IMG/VR virus record: IMGVR_UViG_3300047319_001872
Span: 249,316 to 313,315 of that record
Direction: 5' to 3' (one strand)
DNA length: 64,000 bases
Notes under the pieces: model-generated
Seen by the model: the letters and a program-made list of their open reading frames with translations, nothing else
Database searches by the model: none
Told to the model about the DNA's origin: nothing
In this document: positions 15,900-63,371 of the stretch, piece after piece
How positions within the stretch are numbered: the first letter of the stretch is position 1
Layout of the letters: each line of letters begins with the position of its first letter
Position numbers and translations under genes: made by a program

Positions 15900-17447
15900 T
15901 TACTTGTCAAGCGACTGCAAGTGATCGATCACAGCGTGACGGTGTTTCGGCTCGAGCTTCTCGAGAAAGCCGATAACCGAGTGAATCACGCGGTGTTCGA
16001 ACTCTTCTGCTTCTTGGACGATCTTGTCGATCAGACCCAGACCGGCTTCCGTCACCTGATGTTCCGGTTCAGCCGGGGTTTCCGGCTCGGACGGCAGTTC
16101 GGGGGTCGGGTCGACCGGCACTTCCGGCGTGACCGGTTGGACCGGGTCCGTCGGTTGCGTCGGCTCAGCGGGTGTTTCACCAGCAGCCGGTTGCTCAGCG
16201 CCAGTAGCATCGCCACCAGTCGAAGCATCGGTTGCCGGAGCCGAAGGGTCCGTAGCGTCACCTGCCGCGGGATCAGTCGGTTCTTGTGCGGGGGTGTCAC
16301 CACCTTCTGCCGGGGTATCGCTACCTGCGGCTTGGTCGTCTGCGGGCGCAGCCGGTTGTTCCGGGCTCACCGGTTCTGCGGCTTGACCAGCGTCCGCTGC
16401 ATCGCTGTCTCCAGCCGGAGCGCCAGTGTCGGCAGCCGGGGCTTCGGGAGCGGCAGGAACATCACCCGTAGCGACGTCTTGATCAGCAGCCGGAGCTGCC
16501 GGTTCGTCCGTCGTTGCTGCGGGTGCGTCGGCCGGAGCTTCAGCCGACGGATCTTGGACGACAGGTTCGACGCCTGCATTGGCTGCCGGATCGACTTCTT
16601 CCGCAGCAGGATCGACTTCATCGGTAGCAGGCGGAACTTCCGGCGACGGATCGACCACCGGGTCCGTCACAGCAGCTACATCGCTGGTGGGTTGATCCGC
16701 TGCAGGTGCTTCCGGCTGAGCTTCGGCCGGTTGGTCCACAGGTTGTTCTGCGGGCGTGTCCACAGCCGGGGCGACCGGGTCGGTCGACGACGGCTGGGTG
16801 TGCTCGATCACTTCTTCGTCCGAAGGCGAGGCGGGGACAGGTTGAACAGCAACCGGTTCATCCGATTCTGCCGGGGCTTGGGCCGGATCGACAGCTACGG
16901 GAGCTGCCGGATCTTGAGCCGCTGCATCGCCAGCGTCGGTTCCCGAAACGGGTTGCGTCTCTTGTCCAGCATCGACTGCCGGGGTATCCGTCGCTGCAGA
17001 TACGTCCGTGACGACCGGGTCTGCTCCAGCGGGCGCAACTTCAGGCGCCACGACCGGTTCGACCGTGCTGCTATCCACATCTGCAGAACCTGCTCCTGCG
17101 TCAGTGGCGGGTTGTTCTTGGGTTGCATTGGCTTGTGCATCGTCCGTTGCCGGAGCGACGTCCGTCGTGGCCGGGGTAGCAGCTGCGGTGGCTGCGGCGG
17201 CTTGCGCGACGTTGGCAGCAGCTTGCGCGACCGTAATCCCTGCCGGTTGGATCAGCCCGTGACTATCGAGCTCTTCCCCTTCTTGCAGCGAGTACTGTTG
17301 AGCTTGGCCGTTGCTGTCGAGGTACGTCACGACGATTTGGCTTGCGGACGAAACAGGCGCAGACTGGTCTTGATCTGCGGCTGGAATGTTATTGGTTTGA
17401 CCAGCTTCCGCTTGCTGGTCTTGCGTTTGCGCTTGCACGTCCGACAT
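15900..17447 (-). CDS. Highly acidic A/P/D/E/T/Q low-complexity protein (515 aa)
   Basis: AGGAG RBS at ATG 17447; no K/R across the long central region; C-terminal amphipathic helix. Confidence 0.7.
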   Translation of the reverse strand: MSDVQAQTQDQQAEAGQTNNIPAADQDQSAPVSSASQIVVTYLDSNGQAQQYSLQEGEELDSHGLIQPAGITVAQAAANVAQAAAATAAATPATTDVAPATDDAQANATQEQPATDAGAGSADVDSSTVEPVVAPEVAPAGADPVVTDVSAATDTPAVDAGQETQPVSGTDAGDAAAQDPAAPVAVDPAQAPAESDEPVAVQPVPASPSDEEVIEHTQPSSTDPVAPAVDTPAEQPVDQPAEAQPEAPAADQPTSDVAAVTDPVVDPSPEVPPATDEVDPAAEEVDPAANAGVEPVVQDPSAEAPADAPAATTDEPAAPAADQDVATGDVPAAPEAPAADTGAPAGDSDAADAGQAAEPVSPEQPAAPADDQAAGSDTPAEGGDTPAQEPTDPAAGDATDPSAPATDASTGGDATGAEQPAAGETPAEPTQPTDPVQPVTPEVPVDPTPELPSEPETPAEPEHQVTEAGLGLIDKIVQEAEEFEHRVIHSVIGFLEKLEPKHRHAVIDHLQSLDK

Positions 17448-55722: not shown

Positions 55723-55778
55723 TTTGTTTTACTCCTTGTCGACCTACATGATCAAGGAGCCCAATAAAAACGAATCAG

Positions 55779-55830
55779 CGGCATAAAAAGGAAAAAAGGG
55801 CGAGGAGCGGTTTCGGGCCGCCACCTCGCC
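55779..55830 (-). terminator. Hairpin, U-tract and TATGCCG
   Basis: ggcgagg...cctcgcc inverted repeat; A-tract and cggcata on +. Confidence 0.65.
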
Positions 55831-55959
55831 TAAATACAGGTCGTTACAAGTACCGAAAAGGAAAACCAGTCACTGAACATGCCCGATCAATTCGGAGCCA
55901 CAGAGACTCTACTACCACTACCACTTCAACCAAAATCGAGATAGACAGGGGCCAGCTTA

Positions 55960-56260
55960 CTCTTAATCCACGCGATCGACCAACTTCCACAGGAGACTCC
56001 TATATTCGCCAAAGAGCGCTTGCGGAGGCGCAGAGCAGCGATAGGAGTAGGATCGATGTACGAGGAAACGCTGGTGCCAGGGGAAACAAGGAGGAAACCC
56101 CAGCAGCGTGAATAAGCCAGCCCCGCGTCTAGGCATACGGCGCGGTAGCCCGCGGGAGGGCTCGCGCGAGAGTCCTTATCGGCACCAGTCAGGAGGAGGT
56201 CTGCTGTCGATGAGGGTACAGGCTTGCCGGGCCTTTCTCTTCAGAACATTACGGATGGGC
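55960..56260 (+). ncRNA. Candidate structured non-coding RNA with GGA-rich loops
   Basis: Five or more hairpins in an ORF-free gap; wobble pairs are G-U on the + strand. Confidence 0.45.
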
Positions 56261-58980: not shown

Positions 58981-59790
58981 TTAATCTTCAAAATCGCGGC
59001 CGTGCTCCATCATCCACGAATAGATCCGATAGTCGATGGTCTTTTCCACCCGCACCACCGTGTTATCCACTTTCATGAAGTGCATGATCCAGCGATCTTG
59101 TCCCAAGAAGTCTGTCAACTGATGTAGCATGTCGCTCAATTGCAGCGTGATGCTCTCACAGATCTCCTGCGACGCGTAAAAAAGTTGCTTGTCCTGTTCC
59201 GAGATGCGCGCGCGGCCCAGGTCATCCGTGGGTTCATGCTCCACGGCGACGATGTTGCCGGTTTCCCCCCAGCTAAAATTGGCGTCATTCGGATCTTTCG
59301 GATACTGGAACACCGAATCGACCGTGATGCCCGAGCGCTGGAACTGCTCGAAAAGAAACGGACGGATCACCGCGTCGAAATTCAGCTTCTTGTGGCCGCG
59401 ACGAATCCGGCCTTGGCTGGACCACTTCGCATGGTTGATCACCATGTGGTCAATCAGCTCGATGAGCAAATTGCGTGCGCGCAGTGAAAAGCGTGACTGC
59501 GGCTTCAGATACGGCAGATGCACCTTGGGTACGACCAGATCGGCTTTCGCATCGTAGACTTCGTCGCGCAACGGCAACTCGAAAGACGTAATCGGGATCG
59601 GTGTGGCGACATTGTTGACCGCTTCACCTGCGTAGAAATACGGCTGTCCCGCGACCATCACCGGCTCACACTGAGTCGGCAGGTACAAGCCTTCCGGATT
59701 GGGCAACATGTAGGGACCTGCGGCAGCTTCCACCGCGTCGACCCAGTCTCCCAGATCCAGCACCAGCGTTCCAGTGATTTTCAGTTCCAT
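58981..59790 (-). CDS. Conserved hypothetical protein
   Basis: ATG 59790 overlaps the upstream gene end; C-terminal 'VEKTIDYRI'. Confidence 0.6.
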   Translation of the reverse strand: MELKITGTLVLDLGDWVDAVEAAAGPYMLPNPEGLYLPTQCEPVMVAGQPYFYAGEAVNNVATPIPITSFELPLRDEVYDAKADLVVPKVHLPYLKPQSRFSLRARNLLIELIDHMVINHAKWSSQGRIRRGHKKLNFDAVIRPFLFEQFQRSGITVDSVFQYPKDPNDANFSWGETGNIVAVEHEPTDDLGRARISEQDKQLFYASQEICESITLQLSDMLHQLTDFLGQDRWIMHFMKVDNTVVRVEKTIDYRIYSWMMEHGRDFED

Positions 59791-60188
59791 TTTCTTTGGT
59801 AGTCGTAGTTCGTATTGGCAGGGCGATTGTGCACGTAGTACCACATGTACAAGTCAATCCCGCGGATTTCTAAGTCGATGAAGCAGTTGTCGCCGTACAG
59901 CTGCGGCACCTTGATGTATTGGCCGGTGTAGTAATCCAGGTCCAACTCGGAGCGGATCTGGGCATGCAGTCGGGCAAAGCGCCAGTCCTGCGGGTCGTGG
60001 TTCACCGAGAACAAATGATACACCTGCTCAATCTGTTCTTTGACGATCCATTCGATTAAGCGCTCTTCAGTCAACCCGGAGAAGATCAGTTGACTCGCAA
60101 CTGCCCTCGTAGCGCCCTTTAAGACGCTCAGGAAGTCATGGATCTCCTGGATCAATAGCGCCCTAGGTTCGACGGTTAAGAGGTTCAT
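59781..60188 (-). CDS. Hypothetical protein (135 aa)
   Basis: AAGGAG RBS. Confidence 0.6.
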   Translation of the reverse strand: MNLLTVEPRALLIQEIHDFLSVLKGATRAVASQLIFSGLTEERLIEWIVKEQIEQVYHLFSVNHDPQDWRFARLHAQIRSELDLDYYTGQYIKVPQLYGDNCFIDLEIRGIDLYMWYYVHNRPANTNYDYQRKWN

Positions 60189-60247
60189 GGCGGCTCCTTA
60201 TACACAGTATCCAGCGGCTACGTTTGTTTTGACTATTTGTGTAACTG

Positions 60248-60307
60248 CGGCATAAAAAAATAATCAGTCCCTTTTGCACCCTCCCGTAGGAAGGCATAAA
60301 AGGGACT
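60248..60307 (-). terminator. Hairpin, U-tract and TATGCCG closing the post-PhuZ region
   Basis: agtccctttt...aaaagggact; A-tract and cggcata on +. Confidence 0.65.
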
Positions 60308-60309
60308 CG

Positions 60310-60925
60310 CCTCGTCCGATGCTCACCCAAACAGCTACCCGTAAAACGGACTGTGGTATTGTTGCGGTCGGAACTGAGGCGGTCTGGACATCTCAAGCTG
60401 CGAGCCAAGTGTTAGGCCCTAGTGCTAATTTTTAGACAGTCCATGGACCTCTAAACAATTGCTTCGGGTACTCCCTTGAAAACTGTCGCACTTATTGCCT
60501 CCTGCGCACCAGTAGGCGGCAGGCCATTACTCACGGAATGTAAAAGACCCTAGCCCCCGATGCACCCCCTGCGCCTGATGCGCGGTTCGGCTGGAATGGG
60601 ACTAAAGTCTGCGCATGGCCAAATCATCGGTCCGAGTCAACGGGCCAAGCGCATCGCCTCAATGGCTGAAGGTACTACGAGCACCCTTAGCTCGCGTTGC
60701 CTTCCCCAGCTGGGGACGTCGCGCATGATGTCTATTCACCCTCGCATGCGCCTGCAAGGGTGAGGACCGATGAACTTTACGAGTGGCGGCGGCCTGAATG
60801 GACGGGAACCACGAAAAATCGTGATAGATAAACCGTCCAAAGTCAGACCACCACCACCGGGCCAGAGAGCTGATCTGGCTAAACATCGGTTCTTATTGCT
60901 TTCCTTATCGTGTCGTCCAGCGTTG
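60310..60925 (-). ncRNA. Candidate ~600-nt structured RNA downstream of phuZ
   Basis: No credible ORF; nested helices whose mismatches are G-U only on the - strand. Confidence 0.5.
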
Positions 60926-60928
60926 TTG

Positions 60929-61933
60929 TTAGAGGATCAGCCCCGTTTCATCCGCACGGTCGCCTGCGCCCAGAATGGACTTGTGCGCGACGCGCGACTG
61001 CTGTTCCTCGCTCAGGTGCGAGAGCACCTTTTGCACGTTGGCCACGGCTTCGTGGATCACCCGGTCGCCCGTGATGTAATGCACCGGCGATTCCTTGGCG
61101 ATGTTCTCGGGCATGTCGGCCGGGAACAGTCCGAGAAAGCGCACTTCGGGCATGAACGGTAGCGTCGCATCAGCGCCCGCTTTCGCCAGCGTCGCAACGC
61201 TGATGACATTGCCCACGTGAGCGTGCGATTCGCCGTTCTTGACGATGTGCAGGCCTGCGAGCATCGGCTGCTTGAAGGTGGTGACCTTGTCGAAGCGCAA
61301 CCAGTTGTAGAGGTCACGTGTATCGAGCTCGGTGTTCTCGCGGCTAAAGAGCGCAGCGAGGCCGACCACGACGGTTTCGATTTCAGCGTCCACCGCAGCG
61401 CGCGGGGTGTCTTGCGTGTTCTGCAGATAGGCGATGACGATCGGGGCGCCCGCGGCCTTGGCGATGGCTTCGTAGGACTTGATCGTGTTGAGCGTGTTCT
61501 CCGCGTACAGCCGGGTCGAGGCATCGCCCACCATGACCACCACCACCGGCACGTCACGTGCGAGCAGCTCTTGCGTAAGAATCGGGCCGATCACCGAACC
61601 CGAACCACCCGACGCCGAATGCAACACCAGTGCCAGGTTACCCGGCTTGTGCGCGTGCAGGATTTCCTTGACGCGTTCCTTCACGACAGCGGCATGTTCG
61701 CGGCGCACTTGTCCAGAACCGTCGAGGCCCTGGAAGTGGTAGATCGCGTTCGCATCGATGTTCGCGTTGAGCATGTTCGACTTGCTGGTGTCGATATACG
61801 TCGGCTCGACGACAGCCATGCCAGCTTGTGCTTTACCGCGGTACTTCTCGAAGCGCGTCGCAATGTTCGTGCCAGCTCCGCCCGCTGCGTAGATGCTGAT
61901 ACGACCTTTGACTTTCTCGATGATTTCGGACAT
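60929..61933 (-). CDS. phuZ: PhuZ tubulin/FtsZ-family GTPase
   Basis: GGAGTN, IDTS, GSGQVR, SASGGSGS signature, ELDTRD T7-like loop; 334 aa. Confidence 0.93.
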   Translation of the reverse strand: MSEIIEKVKGRISIYAAGGAGTNIATRFEKYRGKAQAGMAVVEPTYIDTSKSNMLNANIDANAIYHFQGLDGSGQVRREHAAVVKERVKEILHAHKPGNLALVLHSASGGSGSVIGPILTQELLARDVPVVVVMVGDASTRLYAENTLNTIKSYEAIAKAAGAPIVIAYLQNTQDTPRAAVDAEIETVVVGLAALFSRENTELDTRDLYNWLRFDKVTTFKQPMLAGLHIVKNGESHAHVGNVISVATLAKAGADATLPFMPEVRFLGLFPADMPENIAKESPVHYITGDRVIHEAVANVQKVLSHLSEEQQSRVAHKSILGAGDRADETGLIL

Positions 61934-62019
61934 GTTTCTTTCCTAGTTTTTTCAAATTGAAGCACTCCTACATAGTAGGGGATGTGCTCGTAAAAAATGC
62001 CCGTGGTGAAACGGGCACC

Positions 62020-62567: not shown

Positions 62568-63371
62568 GTGAATCCTATCACCCGAGCTGTGGATGATCTG
62601 AAGTTCCGGATTCCACGGCGTGTATTGGAAGAGGTGTTTGTCGAGCGCACGGCCCGTTGGCGCACAGCCCCGCGTTCGATCGACGAATGTATTTTGGAAC
62701 AAGTGGTCCGCCCTCGTGTCCTGGTGGACTGCAATCTCGTGGGTGGCACGGAAGCATTCGTCTATCTGGACGATATTCCGTACGAGCGGATGAACGACTA
62801 TACGTCGGTGTATCGCATCCCGAAGACCAAGACGCAGGGGCGCTCGATTCTGTCGGTGCTGAACATCACGTTCGCCGACCCCACCAAAGTCTCAAGCTAC
62901 GGGGTGGCCGCGGGTGCGCAGAACACGACCATGCTGCAAGCCGGACAGGCCGTGATGGACGCCTACGGGGCCTTGCCCGTGACCTCAACGCATCGCGTGC
63001 AGTTGATCGGGGAAAACACGATCATGGTGCGCGACACCATAGTGCTGCCCCCTGATGTGTATCTGCGCTGTATTCTCGCCAATGACGAGAACATGTCGCA
63101 CATCCAGATGCGCAGCTACCGGCCGTTCTGTCGGCTGGTGGAACTCGCGGTGAAAGCCTACATCTACAATGACCAAGTCATCGAGGTGGACATCGGCAAG
63201 ATCCGGGGTGGTCAGGAAATCGGTAAGTTCAAGGAAATCGTCGAGGAGTACAAGGACGCGGAAGAACAGTATCAGGAGTTCCTCGCCACCACCTGGCAGA
63301 AGGTGGCGTACATGAACGACAACGAAACGTTTAACCGCTTTGTACGCAGTTTGATTGGTGGCTATCGGTAA
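62568..63371 (+). CDS. Conserved core, probable virion (neck/adaptor-like) protein
   Basis: GGAGG RBS with GTG start; TATG at about 62536 upstream; function inferred. Confidence 0.6.
   Translation: MNPITRAVDDLKFRIPRRVLEEVFVERTARWRTAPRSIDECILEQVVRPRVLVDCNLVGGTEAFVYLDDIPYERMNDYTSVYRIPKTKTQGRSILSVLNITFADPTKVSSYGVAAGAQNTTMLQAGQAVMDAYGALPVTSTHRVQLIGENTIMVRDTIVLPPDVYLRCILANDENMSHIQMRSYRPFCRLVELAVKAYIYNDQVIEVDIGKIRGGQEIGKFKEIVEEYKDAEEQYQEFLATTWQKVAYMNDNETFNRFVRSLIGGYR

What the first reader, a model, noticed from the sequence alone, without database searches (positions are those of the whole stretch)
60310..60925. About 600-nt structured RNA downstream of phuZ, with a possible alternative pairing
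Seen: a 15-bp helix 60783-60797/60843-60857 with three C-A mismatches on + that are G-U on -. It encloses TGGACGG/CCGTCCA and CACGA/TCGTG. An 11-bp hairpin at 60736-60763 and GAAGG..CGAGC/GCTCG..CCTTC at about 60668-60704 are also G-U on -. GGACCGATG (60764-60772) can pair with either CATCGGTCC (about 60625-60633) or CATCGGT (60884-60890). The region ends at a terminator near 60260. I do not recognise tRNA, RNase P, tmRNA or intron signatures. Inference: a new large phage ncRNA or switchable 3' UTR co-transcribed with phuZ.
Basis: partly seen in the sequence, partly recalled or inferred. Interest (0 to 1): 0.7.

Follow-up and report, generated by a model that had tools for sequence, protein, structure and literature searches.

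The report
Hidden small gene plus structured RNA
Just after the tubulin gene phuZ of a Burkholderia-type jumbo phage lies a conserved, tightly folded ~670-base transcript tail that is not a pure non-coding RNA. Its first third encodes an unannotated ~75-residue protein, and the rest is a new RNA structure that may control that protein's translation.

Summary
The helices and the alternative pairing are at the stated coordinates, and the RNA is read from the minus strand. The minus strand folds far better than shuffles (z -10.3; plus strand -4.4; phuZ control +0.5). Across 14 homologues, 28 of 64 core pairs show compensatory changes, against 10.2 +/- 2.2 in shuffles. Rfam, ARAGORN and literature searches found nothing known.

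The interpretation needs one correction. The 5' third (60659-60886, minus) is an ORF that stays open in every homologue found (74-85 aa). Its N-terminal ~43 codons are under purifying selection: pN/pS 0.38, changes by codon position 35/30/64. Gene callers missed it on all contigs but one (L033).

Its last ~25 codons and the following ~350 nt show no coding signal. They are 2.5-4 times more conserved than phuZ synonymous sites, which points to RNA-level constraint.

The ORF's AUG lies in ACCGAUG, which pairs with CAUCGGU. A covariation-supported stem in the 3' core displays GGACCGAUG, a perfect 9-nt competitor. All three elements are essentially invariant.

Most likely this is a phuZ-cotranscribed small-protein mRNA with a long structured 3' domain that gates the ORF's start codon. 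Transcription, translation and switching are untested. The family is FLC9-like phages. More distant relatives carry equally structured gaps after phuZ with no significant homology.

The parts
61965..61979 (-). Conserved CCTACTATGTAGGAG motif upstream of phuZ. It holds a TATG at 61971-61974 and is the likely promoter and start of the transcription unit.
   Evidence: Invariant in 5 relatives (one, L008, has a single-base insertion inside it) and sits just after a covarying terminator hairpin. phiKZ late promoters are TATG with G as the start site (PMC4666361). Promoter function here is inferred.
60929..61933 (-). phuZ, the phage tubulin gene (334 aa).
   Evidence: Pfam TubZ_C_2 scores 29.1 bits (cut-off 27) and Tubulin 29.7 bits (cut-off 33). 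tblastn hits annotated PhuZ genes in 209 phage records.
60659..60886 (-). Unannotated small ORF of 75 codons plus stop. The N-terminal ~43 residues (MF.....LARWW......Y.D.SW.PSI.AAA.RK.HRS) are conserved at the protein level.
   Evidence: - Open in all 15 homologues (74-85 aa).
- The only indel among the first nine sequences is 3 nt.
- Changes by codon position are 30/27/53 over 9 sequences and 35/30/64 over the N-terminal 45 columns of 14 sequences.
- pN/pS is 0.40 in the ORF frame and 1.07 and 1.43 in the other frames; the N-terminal part gives 0.38.
- The antisense frame with the same wobble phase contains stops.
- Against: atypical codon usage and no protein homologue.
60884..60890 (-). 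ACCGAUG, which contains the ORF start codon. It is the 5' strand of the closing helix P1.
   Evidence: Pairs with CAUCGGU in the RNAalifold consensus and in the MFE structure. Invariant in 13 of 14 sequences; L033 has AUCGAUG, which keeps the pair as G-U.
60783..60857 (-). Long helix (60783-60797 with 60843-60857) that encloses GGACGG/CCGUCC and the CACGA/UCGUG hairpin (60810-60823). It lies inside the ORF.
   Evidence: Variation is mostly wobble-compatible one-sided change, with a few compensatory pairs. The 3' strand changes synonymously while the 5' strand changes the protein.
60764..60772 (-). CAUCGGUCC, the 'anti-start' strand (ORF codons for H-R-S). It is complementary both to the start-codon element and to the 3' loop.
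   Evidence: Invariant in 14 sequences with no synonymous change, although flanking codons vary.
60736..60763 (-). Covarying hairpin inside the ORF. Its loop GGCGC is conserved in 9 of 14 sequences.
   Evidence: 8 of 10 pairs have compensatory changes, and these changes alter the encoded amino acids.
60489..60736 (-). Conserved core domain, covered by covariance models R1 and R2. It starts in the last ~25 ORF codons, and the ORF stop codon lies in a hairpin loop.
   Evidence: - 12 helices, 95.6% of cells paired, 28 of 64 pairs compensatory.
- Divergence from L007 and from FLC9 is 0.00 and 0.11 at RNA positions 195-270, and 0.06 and 0.21 at positions 271-440. The phuZ synonymous values for the same pairs are 0.235 and 0.544.
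- No 3-nt periodicity.
60625..60633 (-). GGACCGAUG, a perfect 9-nt complement of CAUCGGUCC, displayed in the loop of helix 6 (stem about 60608-60653).
   Evidence: Invariant in 13 of 14 sequences; L028 has GGACCGGUG, which keeps a G-U pair. The enclosing stem has 6 of 10 compensatory pairs.
60382..60488 (-). Domain 4: long-range helices around a variable hairpin. FLC9 has a 22-nt insertion here.
   Evidence: RNAalifold pairs 420-562 include several compensatory changes.
60308..60381 (-). Domain 5: an irregular hairpin that abuts the terminator. It exists as two sequence types that are ~60% divergent yet fold alike.
   Evidence: Several pairs split 4:4 between two pair types (for example CG and GC).
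60254..60307 (-). Terminator: hairpin 60266-60307, then GAUUA, then a U7 run at 60254-60260.
   Evidence: Conserved with compensatory UA/AU changes. It belongs to a genome-wide 'GC hairpin + TTATGCCG' signal.
60248..60255 (-). TTATGCCG motif (TATG at 60251-60254). It is the likely restart promoter for the next gene, 59781-60188.
   Evidence: Found 33 times in the genome against 9 expected, almost always right after a GC-rich hairpin. The TATG analogy comes from PMC4666361. Promoter function is inferred.

Best explanation
The region is the tail of the phuZ transcription unit and has two overlapping layers.

(1) A small protein gene. It has 74-85 codons, and the functional part is the N-terminal ~43 residues. 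It lies inside a very stable 5' RNA domain whose closing helix (ACCGAUG with CAUCGGU) buries its start codon. No conserved Shine-Dalgarno sequence lies at a usable distance.

(2) A conserved, multi-helix RNA domain of about 350-400 nt without coding constraint. It begins within the last ~25 codons of the ORF and runs to a hairpin-U7 terminator.

One stem of this domain displays GGACCGAUG in its loop. That loop is a perfect 9-bp partner for the anti-start strand CAUCGGUCC, including two extra C residues that could act as a toehold. I propose that this loop-strand contact competes with the start-codon helix. The 3' domain would then work as a cis-acting translational switch or timer for the small ORF. 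Only complete, correctly folded transcripts, or transcripts whose 3' domain has bound some factor, would expose the AUG.

Shown: the structure, the strand, the covariation, the coding constraint, the invariance of the three elements and the clade-limited distribution.

Inferred: co-transcription with phuZ, translation of the ORF, the switching itself, and whatever signal the 3' domain responds to.
For: Structure:
- z -10.3 on the minus strand against -4.4 on the plus strand; the ORF domain alone gives z -7.0.
- RNAalifold on 8 sequences gives 42 of 180 pairs with compensatory change.
- The core in 14 sequences has 28 of 64 compensatory pairs, with 0 of 500 shuffles reaching that. The 5' domain has 14 of 43.

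Coding:
- The ORF is open in all 15 homologues.
- Codon-position changes are 30/27/53 and 35/30/64. Periodicity is confined to the first ~270 nt.
- pN/pS is 0.40 in the ORF frame and 1.07 and 1.43 in the other frames. L007 and L005 differ by 5 synonymous changes and 1 non-synonymous.
- The block YHDFSWFPSIQAAA.RKV varies almost only at third positions.
- The antisense frame is closed.

RNA-level constraint beyond coding:
- Codons 52-75 are invariant at all codon positions among the closer relatives. The C-terminal pN/pS is 0.82.
- The core diverges 2.5-4 times more slowly than phuZ synonymous sites.

Switch:
- The three elements are essentially invariant, and both observed variants keep pairing through G-U.
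- Duplex energies are -8.9 and -15.1 kcal/mol. The two nested states lie within about 7 kcal/mol of each other in all 9 homologues tested, and the MFE is one state in some and the other in others.
- The stem that displays the loop covaries at 6 of 10 pairs.

Transcription unit:
- A conserved TATG motif lies upstream of phuZ and none lies between phuZ and the ORF.
- The terminator plus TTATGCCG is a genome-wide boundary signal.
Against: - There is no expression data of any kind; no RNA run was listed.
- The ORF has atypical codon usage: LLR -0.07 per codon against 0.35 +/- 0.15 for real genes, with GC1/2/3 of 0.53/0.57/0.59 against 0.63/0.41/0.69.
- It has no convincing Shine-Dalgarno sequence.
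- It has no protein homologue among 5.8 billion and 1.8 billion sequences.
- It scores low for 'protein-likeness' in the ESM Atlas and gives a low-confidence AF2 model, pLDDT 59.7.
- Gene callers missed it on all contigs but one.
- Because all three pairing elements are invariant, neither P1 nor the loop contact has true compensatory support. Two wobble-compatible changes are only weak evidence (about 1 in 9 by chance).
- Helix 6 covaries, so the loop contact would have to be a pseudoknot, which was not modelled.
- The 3' non-coding part alone folds only marginally better than shuffles (z -1.9).
- Nothing indicates what signal, if any, flips the switch.
Confidence: 0.45

Rival explanations
1. 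The RNA itself is the product. It would be a trans-acting or scaffold RNA, or a ribonucleoprotein: for example a decoy or sponge, an RNA that binds the small basic protein encoded within it, or a 3'-UTR-derived regulatory RNA. The AUG/anti-AUG/loop complementarities would then be architectural long-range contacts, possibly even intermolecular, rather than a translational switch.
For: - The core is conserved well beyond any need of the ORF, and its sequence-invariant single-stranded stretches suggest binding surfaces.
- The encoded protein has an Arg/Lys/His-rich tail.
- Equally structured gaps of about 600-800 nt follow phuZ in relatives where the sequence is not significantly alignable. That argues for selection on an RNA as such.
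- Large phage-borne structured RNAs such as ROOL and GOLLD are a precedent (my own knowledge).
Against: - No partner or target is known.
- The basic tail is at most weakly constrained at the protein level (pN/pS 0.82), so it is unlikely to be a specific RNA-binding motif.
- The protein-RNA complex prediction was not folded by the tool, so it gives no evidence either way.
- There is no evidence of processing.
Confidence: 0.2
2. A passive structured 3' UTR. The folds only stabilise the phuZ/ORF mRNA against 3' exonucleases and ensure termination. There is no switching and no separate RNA function.
For: The element ends in a strong conserved terminator and has stacked helices directly upstream. 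Domain 5 exists as two very different sequences with a similar fold, as expected for a generic protective hairpin.
Against: - Generic stabilisers do not need 170 nt of near-invariant sequence with invariant loops.
- They do not need three invariant mutually complementary 7-9-mers, one of which covers a start codon.
- The 32 other sites carrying the same hairpin + TTATGCCG boundary signal show a single hairpin before the motif in the ~45 nt displayed.
Confidence: 0.15
3. A pure non-coding RNA. The ORF would be an untranslated by-product of a GC-rich conserved sequence.
For: - Atypical codon usage and no Shine-Dalgarno sequence.
- No homologues and low language-model recognition.
- Almost never called by gene finders.
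- Other frames also hold conserved short ORFs simply because the sequence is conserved.
Against: - The 3-nt periodicity of substitutions is in phase with the only open frame and confined to it.
- pN/pS is 0.38-0.40, against at least 1 in the other frames.
- In one helix, one strand changes only synonymously while its partner absorbs the non-synonymous changes.
- The ORF stays open at 60-85% nucleotide identity in 15 sequences.
Confidence: 0.1
4. A type I toxin-antitoxin-like or exclusion module. The small peptide would be harmful to the host or to competing phages, and its mRNA would be kept silent by fold-back pairing until it is processed, as with hok mRNA.
For: The start codon is buried by long-range pairing, there is a competing downstream element, and the mRNA is very stable and long relative to the ORF.
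Against: - The peptide has no hydrophobic transmembrane stretch. Charged residues interrupt the Trp/Phe-rich helix, and AF2 predicts three short helices plus a disordered basic tail.
- No antisense promoter or terminator was detected.
- The element sits inside an ordinary phage operon.
- PADLOC and toxin libraries were not searched.
Confidence: 0.07

Closest known systems
Dual-function (coding plus structured) bacterial RNAs such as S. aureus RNAIII/hld and E. coli SgrS/SgrT
   Same: A small ORF under selection is embedded in a long, multi-hairpin RNA. That RNA is conserved well beyond the needs of the ORF.
   Different: No trans-acting base-pairing role is known here. The ORF sits at the 5' end and overlaps the structured core only at its 3' end. 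The element is the tail of a phage operon rather than an independent gene. There is no sequence or Rfam relationship.
Long-range translational control in structured mRNAs (hok mRNA fold-back inhibition; RNA phage MS2 long-distance pairings)
   Same: The initiation region is sequestered by pairing with a distant segment. A second distant segment can compete for the same strand.
   Different: Here the competitor lies in a large conserved 3' domain on a covarying stem. No antisense RNA or processing site is known, and the peptide is not hydrophobic. Membership features were not met or could not be tested.
Large structured RNAs carried by phages and prophages (ROOL, GOLLD) and other 'orphan' large ncRNAs (OLE, raiA)
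   Same: Size class of about 400-650 nt, many helices with covariation, phage-borne, function unknown.
   Different: There is no match to their Rfam models even at E<=10. The distribution is far narrower (one chimallivirus clade). The element overlaps a coding ORF and belongs to an mRNA.
Small RNAs reported in chimalliviruses (phiKZ and 201phi2-1 sRNAs, PMC11512511)
   Same: Non-coding, conserved RNA elements in nucleus-forming jumbo phages, defined by promoter and terminator mapping.
   Different: Those are under 250 nt and are mostly 5'-UTR premature-termination products. None is described downstream of phuZ, and none carries an ORF.
Riboswitches and other cis-regulatory leaders
   Same: A conserved folded domain coupled to an alternative pairing that hides or exposes a start codon.
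   Different: The sensor-like domain lies 3' of the ORF it would regulate. No ligand, aptamer class or Rfam match is known.

Membership tests
Any Rfam 15 family (including RNase P, tmRNA, 6S, group I/II introns, ROOL, GOLLD, HEARO, riboswitches) | A covariance-model match at or near the family's gathering score | tested here: not met
   No hit in the whole window at the gathering threshold. No hit at E<=10 in 60100-61000. Four relatives searched at E<=10 gave only scattered, inconsistent weak hits outside the element.
tRNA / tmRNA | A tRNA-like fold, or a tag-peptide reading frame flanked by a tRNA-like domain | tested here: not met
   ARAGORN found 0 genes in the window.
Protein-coding gene (small ORF) | An open frame conserved across homologues, with indels in multiples of three | tested here: met
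   Open in all 15 homologues at 74-85 aa. The only indel among the first nine sequences is 3 nt.
Protein-coding gene (small ORF) | Purifying selection on the protein: excess of synonymous changes, 3-nt periodicity | tested here: met
   pN/pS is 0.40 (0.38 for the N-terminal part), against 1.07 and 1.43 in the other frames. Codon-position changes are 35/30/64. Periodicity is absent from the rest of the element.
Protein-coding gene (small ORF) | Typical translation signals and codon usage of the genome | tested here: not met
   No conserved Shine-Dalgarno sequence at 5-10 nt. The codon-usage score falls below 99% of 75-codon pieces of real genes.
Protein-coding gene (small ORF) | Evidence of translation | not testable with these tools
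   No Ribo-seq, proteome or RNA run is available.
Conserved structured RNA | Compensatory base changes above phylogeny-aware controls | tested here: met
   11 and then 28 pairs with double changes, with 0 of 500 shuffles reaching that and slid controls giving 0-2 and 4-11. Caveat: the alignment was fitted to the model.
Translational riboregulator (start-codon sequestration switch) | The start codon is paired in one conformer, and a mutually exclusive competitor of comparable energy exists | tested here: met
   P1 buries the AUG in the MFE and consensus structures. The competitor duplex is -15.1 against -8.9 kcal/mol, and the states lie within about 7 kcal/mol in 9 homologues.
Translational riboregulator (start-codon sequestration switch) | Covariation, or experimental proof, of both pairings and of an effect on expression | tested here: inconclusive
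   All three elements are invariant. Only two wobble-preserving single changes were seen. An effect on expression cannot be tested here.
Type I toxin-antitoxin (hok/sok-like) | A small hydrophobic membrane peptide and a cis-encoded antisense RNA | tested here: not met
   The alignment shows no uninterrupted hydrophobic stretch. AF2 gives short helices plus a basic disordered tail. The consensus scan found no antisense promoter or terminator, though that scan is weak.
Intrinsic terminator / transcription-unit boundary of this phage | A GC-rich hairpin followed by a U-run, and the recurring TTATGCCG | tested here: met
   Hairpin 60266-60307, U7 at 60254-60260 and TTATGCCG at 60248-60255. The same signal occurs 33 times in the genome against 9 expected. 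The generic scanner missed it because the U-run starts 5 nt after the stem.
PhuZ (upstream gene) | A tubulin/FtsZ GTPase domain plus the phage TubZ C-terminal domain | tested here: met
   PF22334 scores 29.1 bits, above its cut-off of 27. PF00091 scores 29.7 bits, just under its cut-off of 33. There are 209 phage records with matches annotated as PhuZ.

The most novel reading that the evidence does not exclude
The phuZ-downstream element would be a new class of phage ribonucleic device. A ~400-nt sensor-like RNA domain located 3' of a small ORF would control that ORF's start codon through a long-range loop-strand pseudoknot, or would assemble with the encoded peptide into an RNP. Functionally equivalent but sequence-divergent versions would follow phuZ across a wide clade of soil chimalliviruses. 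That would link an RNA-level regulator to the tubulin and nucleus-positioning module of nucleus-forming phages.
Probability: 0.2. Interest if true: 0.8.

Novelty: new variant of a known kind. Interest (0 to 1): 0.55.

Why it matters
Nucleus-forming jumbo phages are studied intensively, yet almost nothing is known about their RNA-level regulation beyond a few short sRNAs.

This work identifies a gene-sized, strongly conserved RNA structure and a hidden small protein gene directly attached to phuZ in FLC9-like phages. Both are missing from the FLC9 annotation and from nearly all metagenomic gene calls.

It also gives a concrete, testable design: three invariant complementary elements, one of which covers the start codon. 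FLC9 is a cultured phage, so the design can be tested there.

If the wider pattern holds (long structured gaps after phuZ in relatives with only 46-50% PhuZ identity), this may be a general feature of a large phage clade. The case also shows that scans for structured 'intergenic' RNA should test for coding periodicity before calling an ncRNA.

Tried and rejected
- **Known RNA families.** Rfam at the gathering threshold and at E<=10, on the window and on relatives, plus ARAGORN, found nothing.
- **Expression data.** Only DNA metagenome runs hold the sequence and no RNA run was listed. Laying contigs of four runs gave short fragments of already known variants.
- **Cellular homologues.** A pattern scan of 185,579 genomes gave one chance hit in a Bacteroidales MAG.
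- **Protein homologues of the ORF.**
  - The word-index search found none.
  - PHROGs found none; the ORF was not scanned against Pfam.
  - tblastn against phages hit only FLC9.
  - The profile search of 1.8 billion proteins returned only two tandem-repeat artefacts.
  - ESM Atlas gave scores of 0.58 or less.
  - AF2 gave low confidence.
- **Protein-RNA complex prediction.** The tool did not fold this kind of complex, so it is no evidence either way.
- **Antisense coding** as the source of the periodicity was rejected because that frame contains stops.
- **phuZ read-through into the ORF** was rejected because two in-frame stops lie between them.
- **Other small ORFs in 60270-60658** were rejected. 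There is no periodicity, there are many 1-2-nt indels, and the second recurrent ORF is broken in the window itself.
- **'Insertion between conserved neighbours'** was not claimed. The flanking genes show no BLASTP similarity to those of Ralstonia phage RP12.
- **Homologues of the core.** None was found in RP12, RSF1, FLC1-1B or the L010 contig, and there is no second copy in the window's own genome or in FLC9.
- **An internal promoter between phuZ and the ORF.** No over-represented k-mer and no TATG was found.
- **Nested 'state B'** is unlikely as such, because helix 6 covaries. If the contact forms, it must be a pseudoknot.
Full report
**Context**

The window is the right end (249316-313315) of a 313,315-bp IMG/VR virus record with direct terminal repeats. 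Genes around the finding run on the minus strand. phuZ is 60929-61933 (Pfam TubZ_C_2 and Tubulin) and the next called gene is 59781-60188, which leaves 739 nt unassigned. The nearest cultured relative is Burkholderia glumae phage FLC9 (LC667451; 321,833 bp). A review places FLC9 in an unclassified genus beside the Burkholderia members of Chimalliviridae (PMC12388082). FLC9 has the same unannotated 770-nt gap between gp10 and gp11 (PhuZ).

**Checking the observation**

They pair better on the minus strand, because G-U pairs there become C-A on the plus strand.

| Segment | Strand | Folding result |
|---|---|---|
| 60250-60930 | minus | MFE -291.7 kcal/mol, z -10.3 |
| 60250-60930 | plus | z -4.4 |
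| phuZ coding control, same length | minus | z +0.5 |
| ORF-containing 5' domain | minus | z -7.0 |
| Non-coding 60300-60658 | minus | z -1.9 |

The energy signal therefore comes mainly from the 5' domain and the terminator. Evidence for structure in the non-coding part has to come from comparison with relatives.

**Homologues**

PhuZ-guided and pattern-guided searches of IMG/VR, JGI metagenomes and Logan/ENA assemblies recovered 14 distinct versions of the element:
- the window;
- L003/L004, L005 and L006=L007;
- FLC9;
- L008, L016 and L018;
- L025, L026, L027, L028, L032 and L033.

Their PhuZ identity to the window ranges from about 99% down to 58%. The source runs are rhizosphere and soil metagenomes. 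A pattern scan of 185,579 prokaryotic genomes gave only a chance hit. The element is single-copy in the window's genome and in FLC9. A covariance model of the core finds nothing in Ralstonia phages RP12, RSF1 and FLC1-1B. Where checked (RP12, RSF1, FLC1-1B), only 123-199 nt separate phuZ from the next gene.

**Structure**

RNAalifold on 8 sequences predicts 180 pairs, 42 of them with compensatory double changes. The core (RNA positions ~193-440, window 60489-60736) was aligned to the model in 14 sequences. There, 95.6% of cells pair and 28 of 64 pairs carry compensatory changes. Column shuffles give 10.2 +/- 2.2 (0 of 500 reach the observed value) and slid partners give 4-11 (the 8-sequence version is). 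These alignments are fitted to the model, which favours the structure, but the margin is large. The 5' domain has 14 of 43 compensatory pairs.

The architecture, from 5' to 3', is:
- a 5' domain closed by helix P1;
- a core of about 12 helices;
- domain 4;
- domain 5;
- the terminator.

No Rfam family matches, even at E<=10, in the window or in four relatives. ARAGORN finds nothing. The literature on chimallivirus transcription reports only sRNAs under 250 nt, none of them near phuZ.

**The turn: a hidden gene**

The RNA-sense frame that starts at the ATG of ACCGATG (60886) is open in every homologue, at 74-85 aa. The evidence that it is coding is as follows.
- Substitutions are 3-periodic in phase with this frame: 30/27/53 over 9 sequences, and 35/30/64 over the N-terminal 45 alignment columns of 14 sequences.
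- The periodicity is confined to the first ~270 nt. The remainder gives p>0.4 in every window.
- Pooled pN/pS is 0.40 in this frame and 1.07 and 1.43 in the other two.
- The close pair L007 and L005 differs by 5 synonymous changes and 1 non-synonymous.
- In the codon alignment, the block YHDFSWFPSIQAAA.RKV varies at 15 of 19 third positions, but at only 3 first positions and 1 second position.
- The antisense frame with the same wobble phase contains stops.

In the helix GGACGG/CCGUCC and the long GGU/GCC helix, the 3' strand changes only synonymously. The 5' strand absorbs radical amino-acid changes while keeping the pairing. Both constraints therefore act on the same nucleotides.

Selection on the protein is limited to the N-terminal ~43 residues (pN/pS 0.38). 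The C-terminal part has pN/pS 0.82 with low pS, is frame-variable at its end, and is nucleotide-invariant among the closer relatives. Its sequence is therefore set mainly by the RNA rather than by the protein.

Several points count against a normal gene:
- atypical codon usage and GC-by-position;
- no conserved Shine-Dalgarno sequence;
- no homologue in any protein resource;
- low language-model recognition;
- a low-confidence three-helix AF2 model;
- gene callers called it on only one contig, L033.

I put the probability that it is translated at about 0.75-0.8.

**The non-coding part**

From the stop codon, which sits in a hairpin loop, to the terminator there is no periodicity. There are many 1-2-nt indels, some of them compensating across a helix, and no ORF shared by all homologues. 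Divergence from L007 and from FLC9 compares with phuZ synonymous sites as follows.

| Region | Window vs L007 | Window vs FLC9 |
|---|---|---|
| phuZ synonymous sites | 0.235 | 0.544 |
| Core, RNA positions 271-440 | 0.06 | 0.21 |
| ORF 3' end, RNA positions 195-270 | 0.00 | 0.11 |

Domain 5 occurs as two ~60%-divergent sequence types that fold alike, and the ORF 5' part also occurs as two types. The two sets of types are distributed discordantly among phages, which indicates modular recombination.

**The alternative pairing**

Three elements are involved:
- ACCGAUG, which includes the start codon (60884-60890);
- CAUCGGUCC (60764-60772), at the ORF codons for H-R-S, with no synonymous variation;
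- GGACCGAUG (60625-60633).

All are invariant except for one base each in L033 (C to U) and L028 (A to G). Both changes keep pairing with the middle element through G-U. The duplexes are 7 bp (-8.9 kcal/mol) and 9 bp (-15.1 kcal/mol). In constrained nested folds the two states differ by no more than about 7 kcal/mol in all nine homologues tested, and the MFE is one state in some and the other in others. 5' fragments of the window's RNA usually form P1 first, in 4 of the 5 lengths tried.

The stem that displays GGACCGAUG in its loop has 6 of 10 compensatory pairs. If the contact forms, it therefore does so as a loop-strand pseudoknot with that stem intact. The two extra C-G pairs could serve as a toehold. 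This is the basis of the proposed cis-acting gate on the ORF's start codon. It is an inference, because invariance prevents a covariation test.

**Transcription unit**

Upstream of phuZ, a covarying terminator is followed by an invariant CCTACTATGTAGGAG. In phiKZ, late promoters are TATG with G as the start site (PMC4666361). There is no TATG or terminator hairpin between phuZ and the ORF.

The element's terminator is followed by TTATGCCG. That motif occurs 33 times in this genome against 9 expected, almost always immediately after a GC-rich hairpin. RP12 has a similar hairpin followed by TTGTATGCC after phuZ. I therefore infer one transcript running from about 61971 to about 60254. It would carry phuZ, the small ORF and the structured tail, with re-initiation for the next gene.

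**Wider distribution (a lead, not a result)**

Relatives with only 46-50% PhuZ identity also have long uncalled gaps after phuZ that are strongly structured:

| Locus | Gap length (nt) | z-score |
|---|---|---|
| L029 | 616 | -6.6 |
| L031 | 680 | -7.8 |
| L034 | 789 | -8.5 |

nhmmer finds no similarity to the family in L029 or L031; L034 was not included in that search. The broadened covariance model's best hit in 67.6 kb is in the L034 gap, at the right place and orientation, but it is not significant (E 0.73). L034 also starts its gap with a Trp-rich 78-aa ORF beginning MFS (E 0.006 in a 9-sequence database). Other relatives have gaps of about 300 nt (L035, L036), and RP12 and FLC1-1B have about 125 nt.

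**Verdict**

This is a new, conserved, structured RNA element attached to phuZ, but a third of it is a hidden small-protein gene. The most economical mechanism is cis control of that gene's start codon by the 3' domain. Function, expression and switching remain untested.

I rate it a new variant of a known kind (structured, dual-layer mRNA or riboregulator), of moderate to good interest. FLC9 provides a clear experimental path.

Noticed in passing
window 60248-60255 and 55779-55786; 33 sites genome-wide (G000); also L020:4500-4545 (RP12): A GC-rich hairpin followed immediately by TTATGCCG recurs 33 times in this phage, against 9 expected. It marks ends of genes in both co-directional and convergent arrangements. 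RP12 has a hairpin followed by TTGTATGCC after phuZ. It looks like a combined terminator and TATG-promoter boundary signal for the phage RNA polymerases.
   Followed up: partly
window 61965-61979 (minus strand): CCTACTATGTAGGAG is invariant upstream of phuZ in five relatives (L008 carries one inserted base inside it). It is near-palindromic around a TATG and directly follows a covarying intrinsic terminator (about 61985-62012).
   Followed up: partly
L029:1763-2378, L031:4000-4679, L034:3491-4279: Relatives with only 46-50% PhuZ identity carry gaps of 616-789 nt after phuZ that fold far better than shuffles (z -6.6 to -8.5). The gaps end in the same hairpin-TTATGCCG signal. L029 and L031 have no detectable sequence homology to the element. 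L034 has a borderline model hit and a Trp-rich ORF starting MFS.
   Followed up: partly
window 60308-60381 and 60760-60860, compared across L001, L003, L005, L007, L008, L016, L018: The element is mosaic. Domain 5 and the ORF 5' part each occur as two sequence types. Their distribution among phages disagrees with each other and with the phuZ tree, which suggests recombination between co-occurring phages.
   Followed up: partly
window 55723-56223: This is a second ~500-nt stretch without a long ORF, and it also ends in hairpin + TTATGCCG. It is only modestly structured (z -2.4) and 68% identical to FLC9, where part of it is annotated as a hypothetical protein.
   Followed up: partly
G000 143553-144503, 16783-17295, 119606-120094 (outside the window): A crude ORF map of the whole phage genome shows other large stretches without a long ORF, up to 951 nt. 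They were not examined.
   Followed up: no
L026:3852-4493 (minus strand of that locus): A 213-aa gene was called antisense across the phuZ 3' end and the small ORF. It is probably a spurious call caused by the unannotated element.
   Followed up: no
window 62568-63371 (plus strand); L025-L028, L030 and L034-L036 upstream of phuZ: A divergently oriented 267-268-aa gene carrying Pfam DUF7484 sits one to three called genes upstream of phuZ in all examined relatives that retain the upstream flank. An ORF of the same length and orientation lies at the matching position in the window but was not scanned. This would be a conserved syntenic anchor for this phage clade.
   Followed up: no
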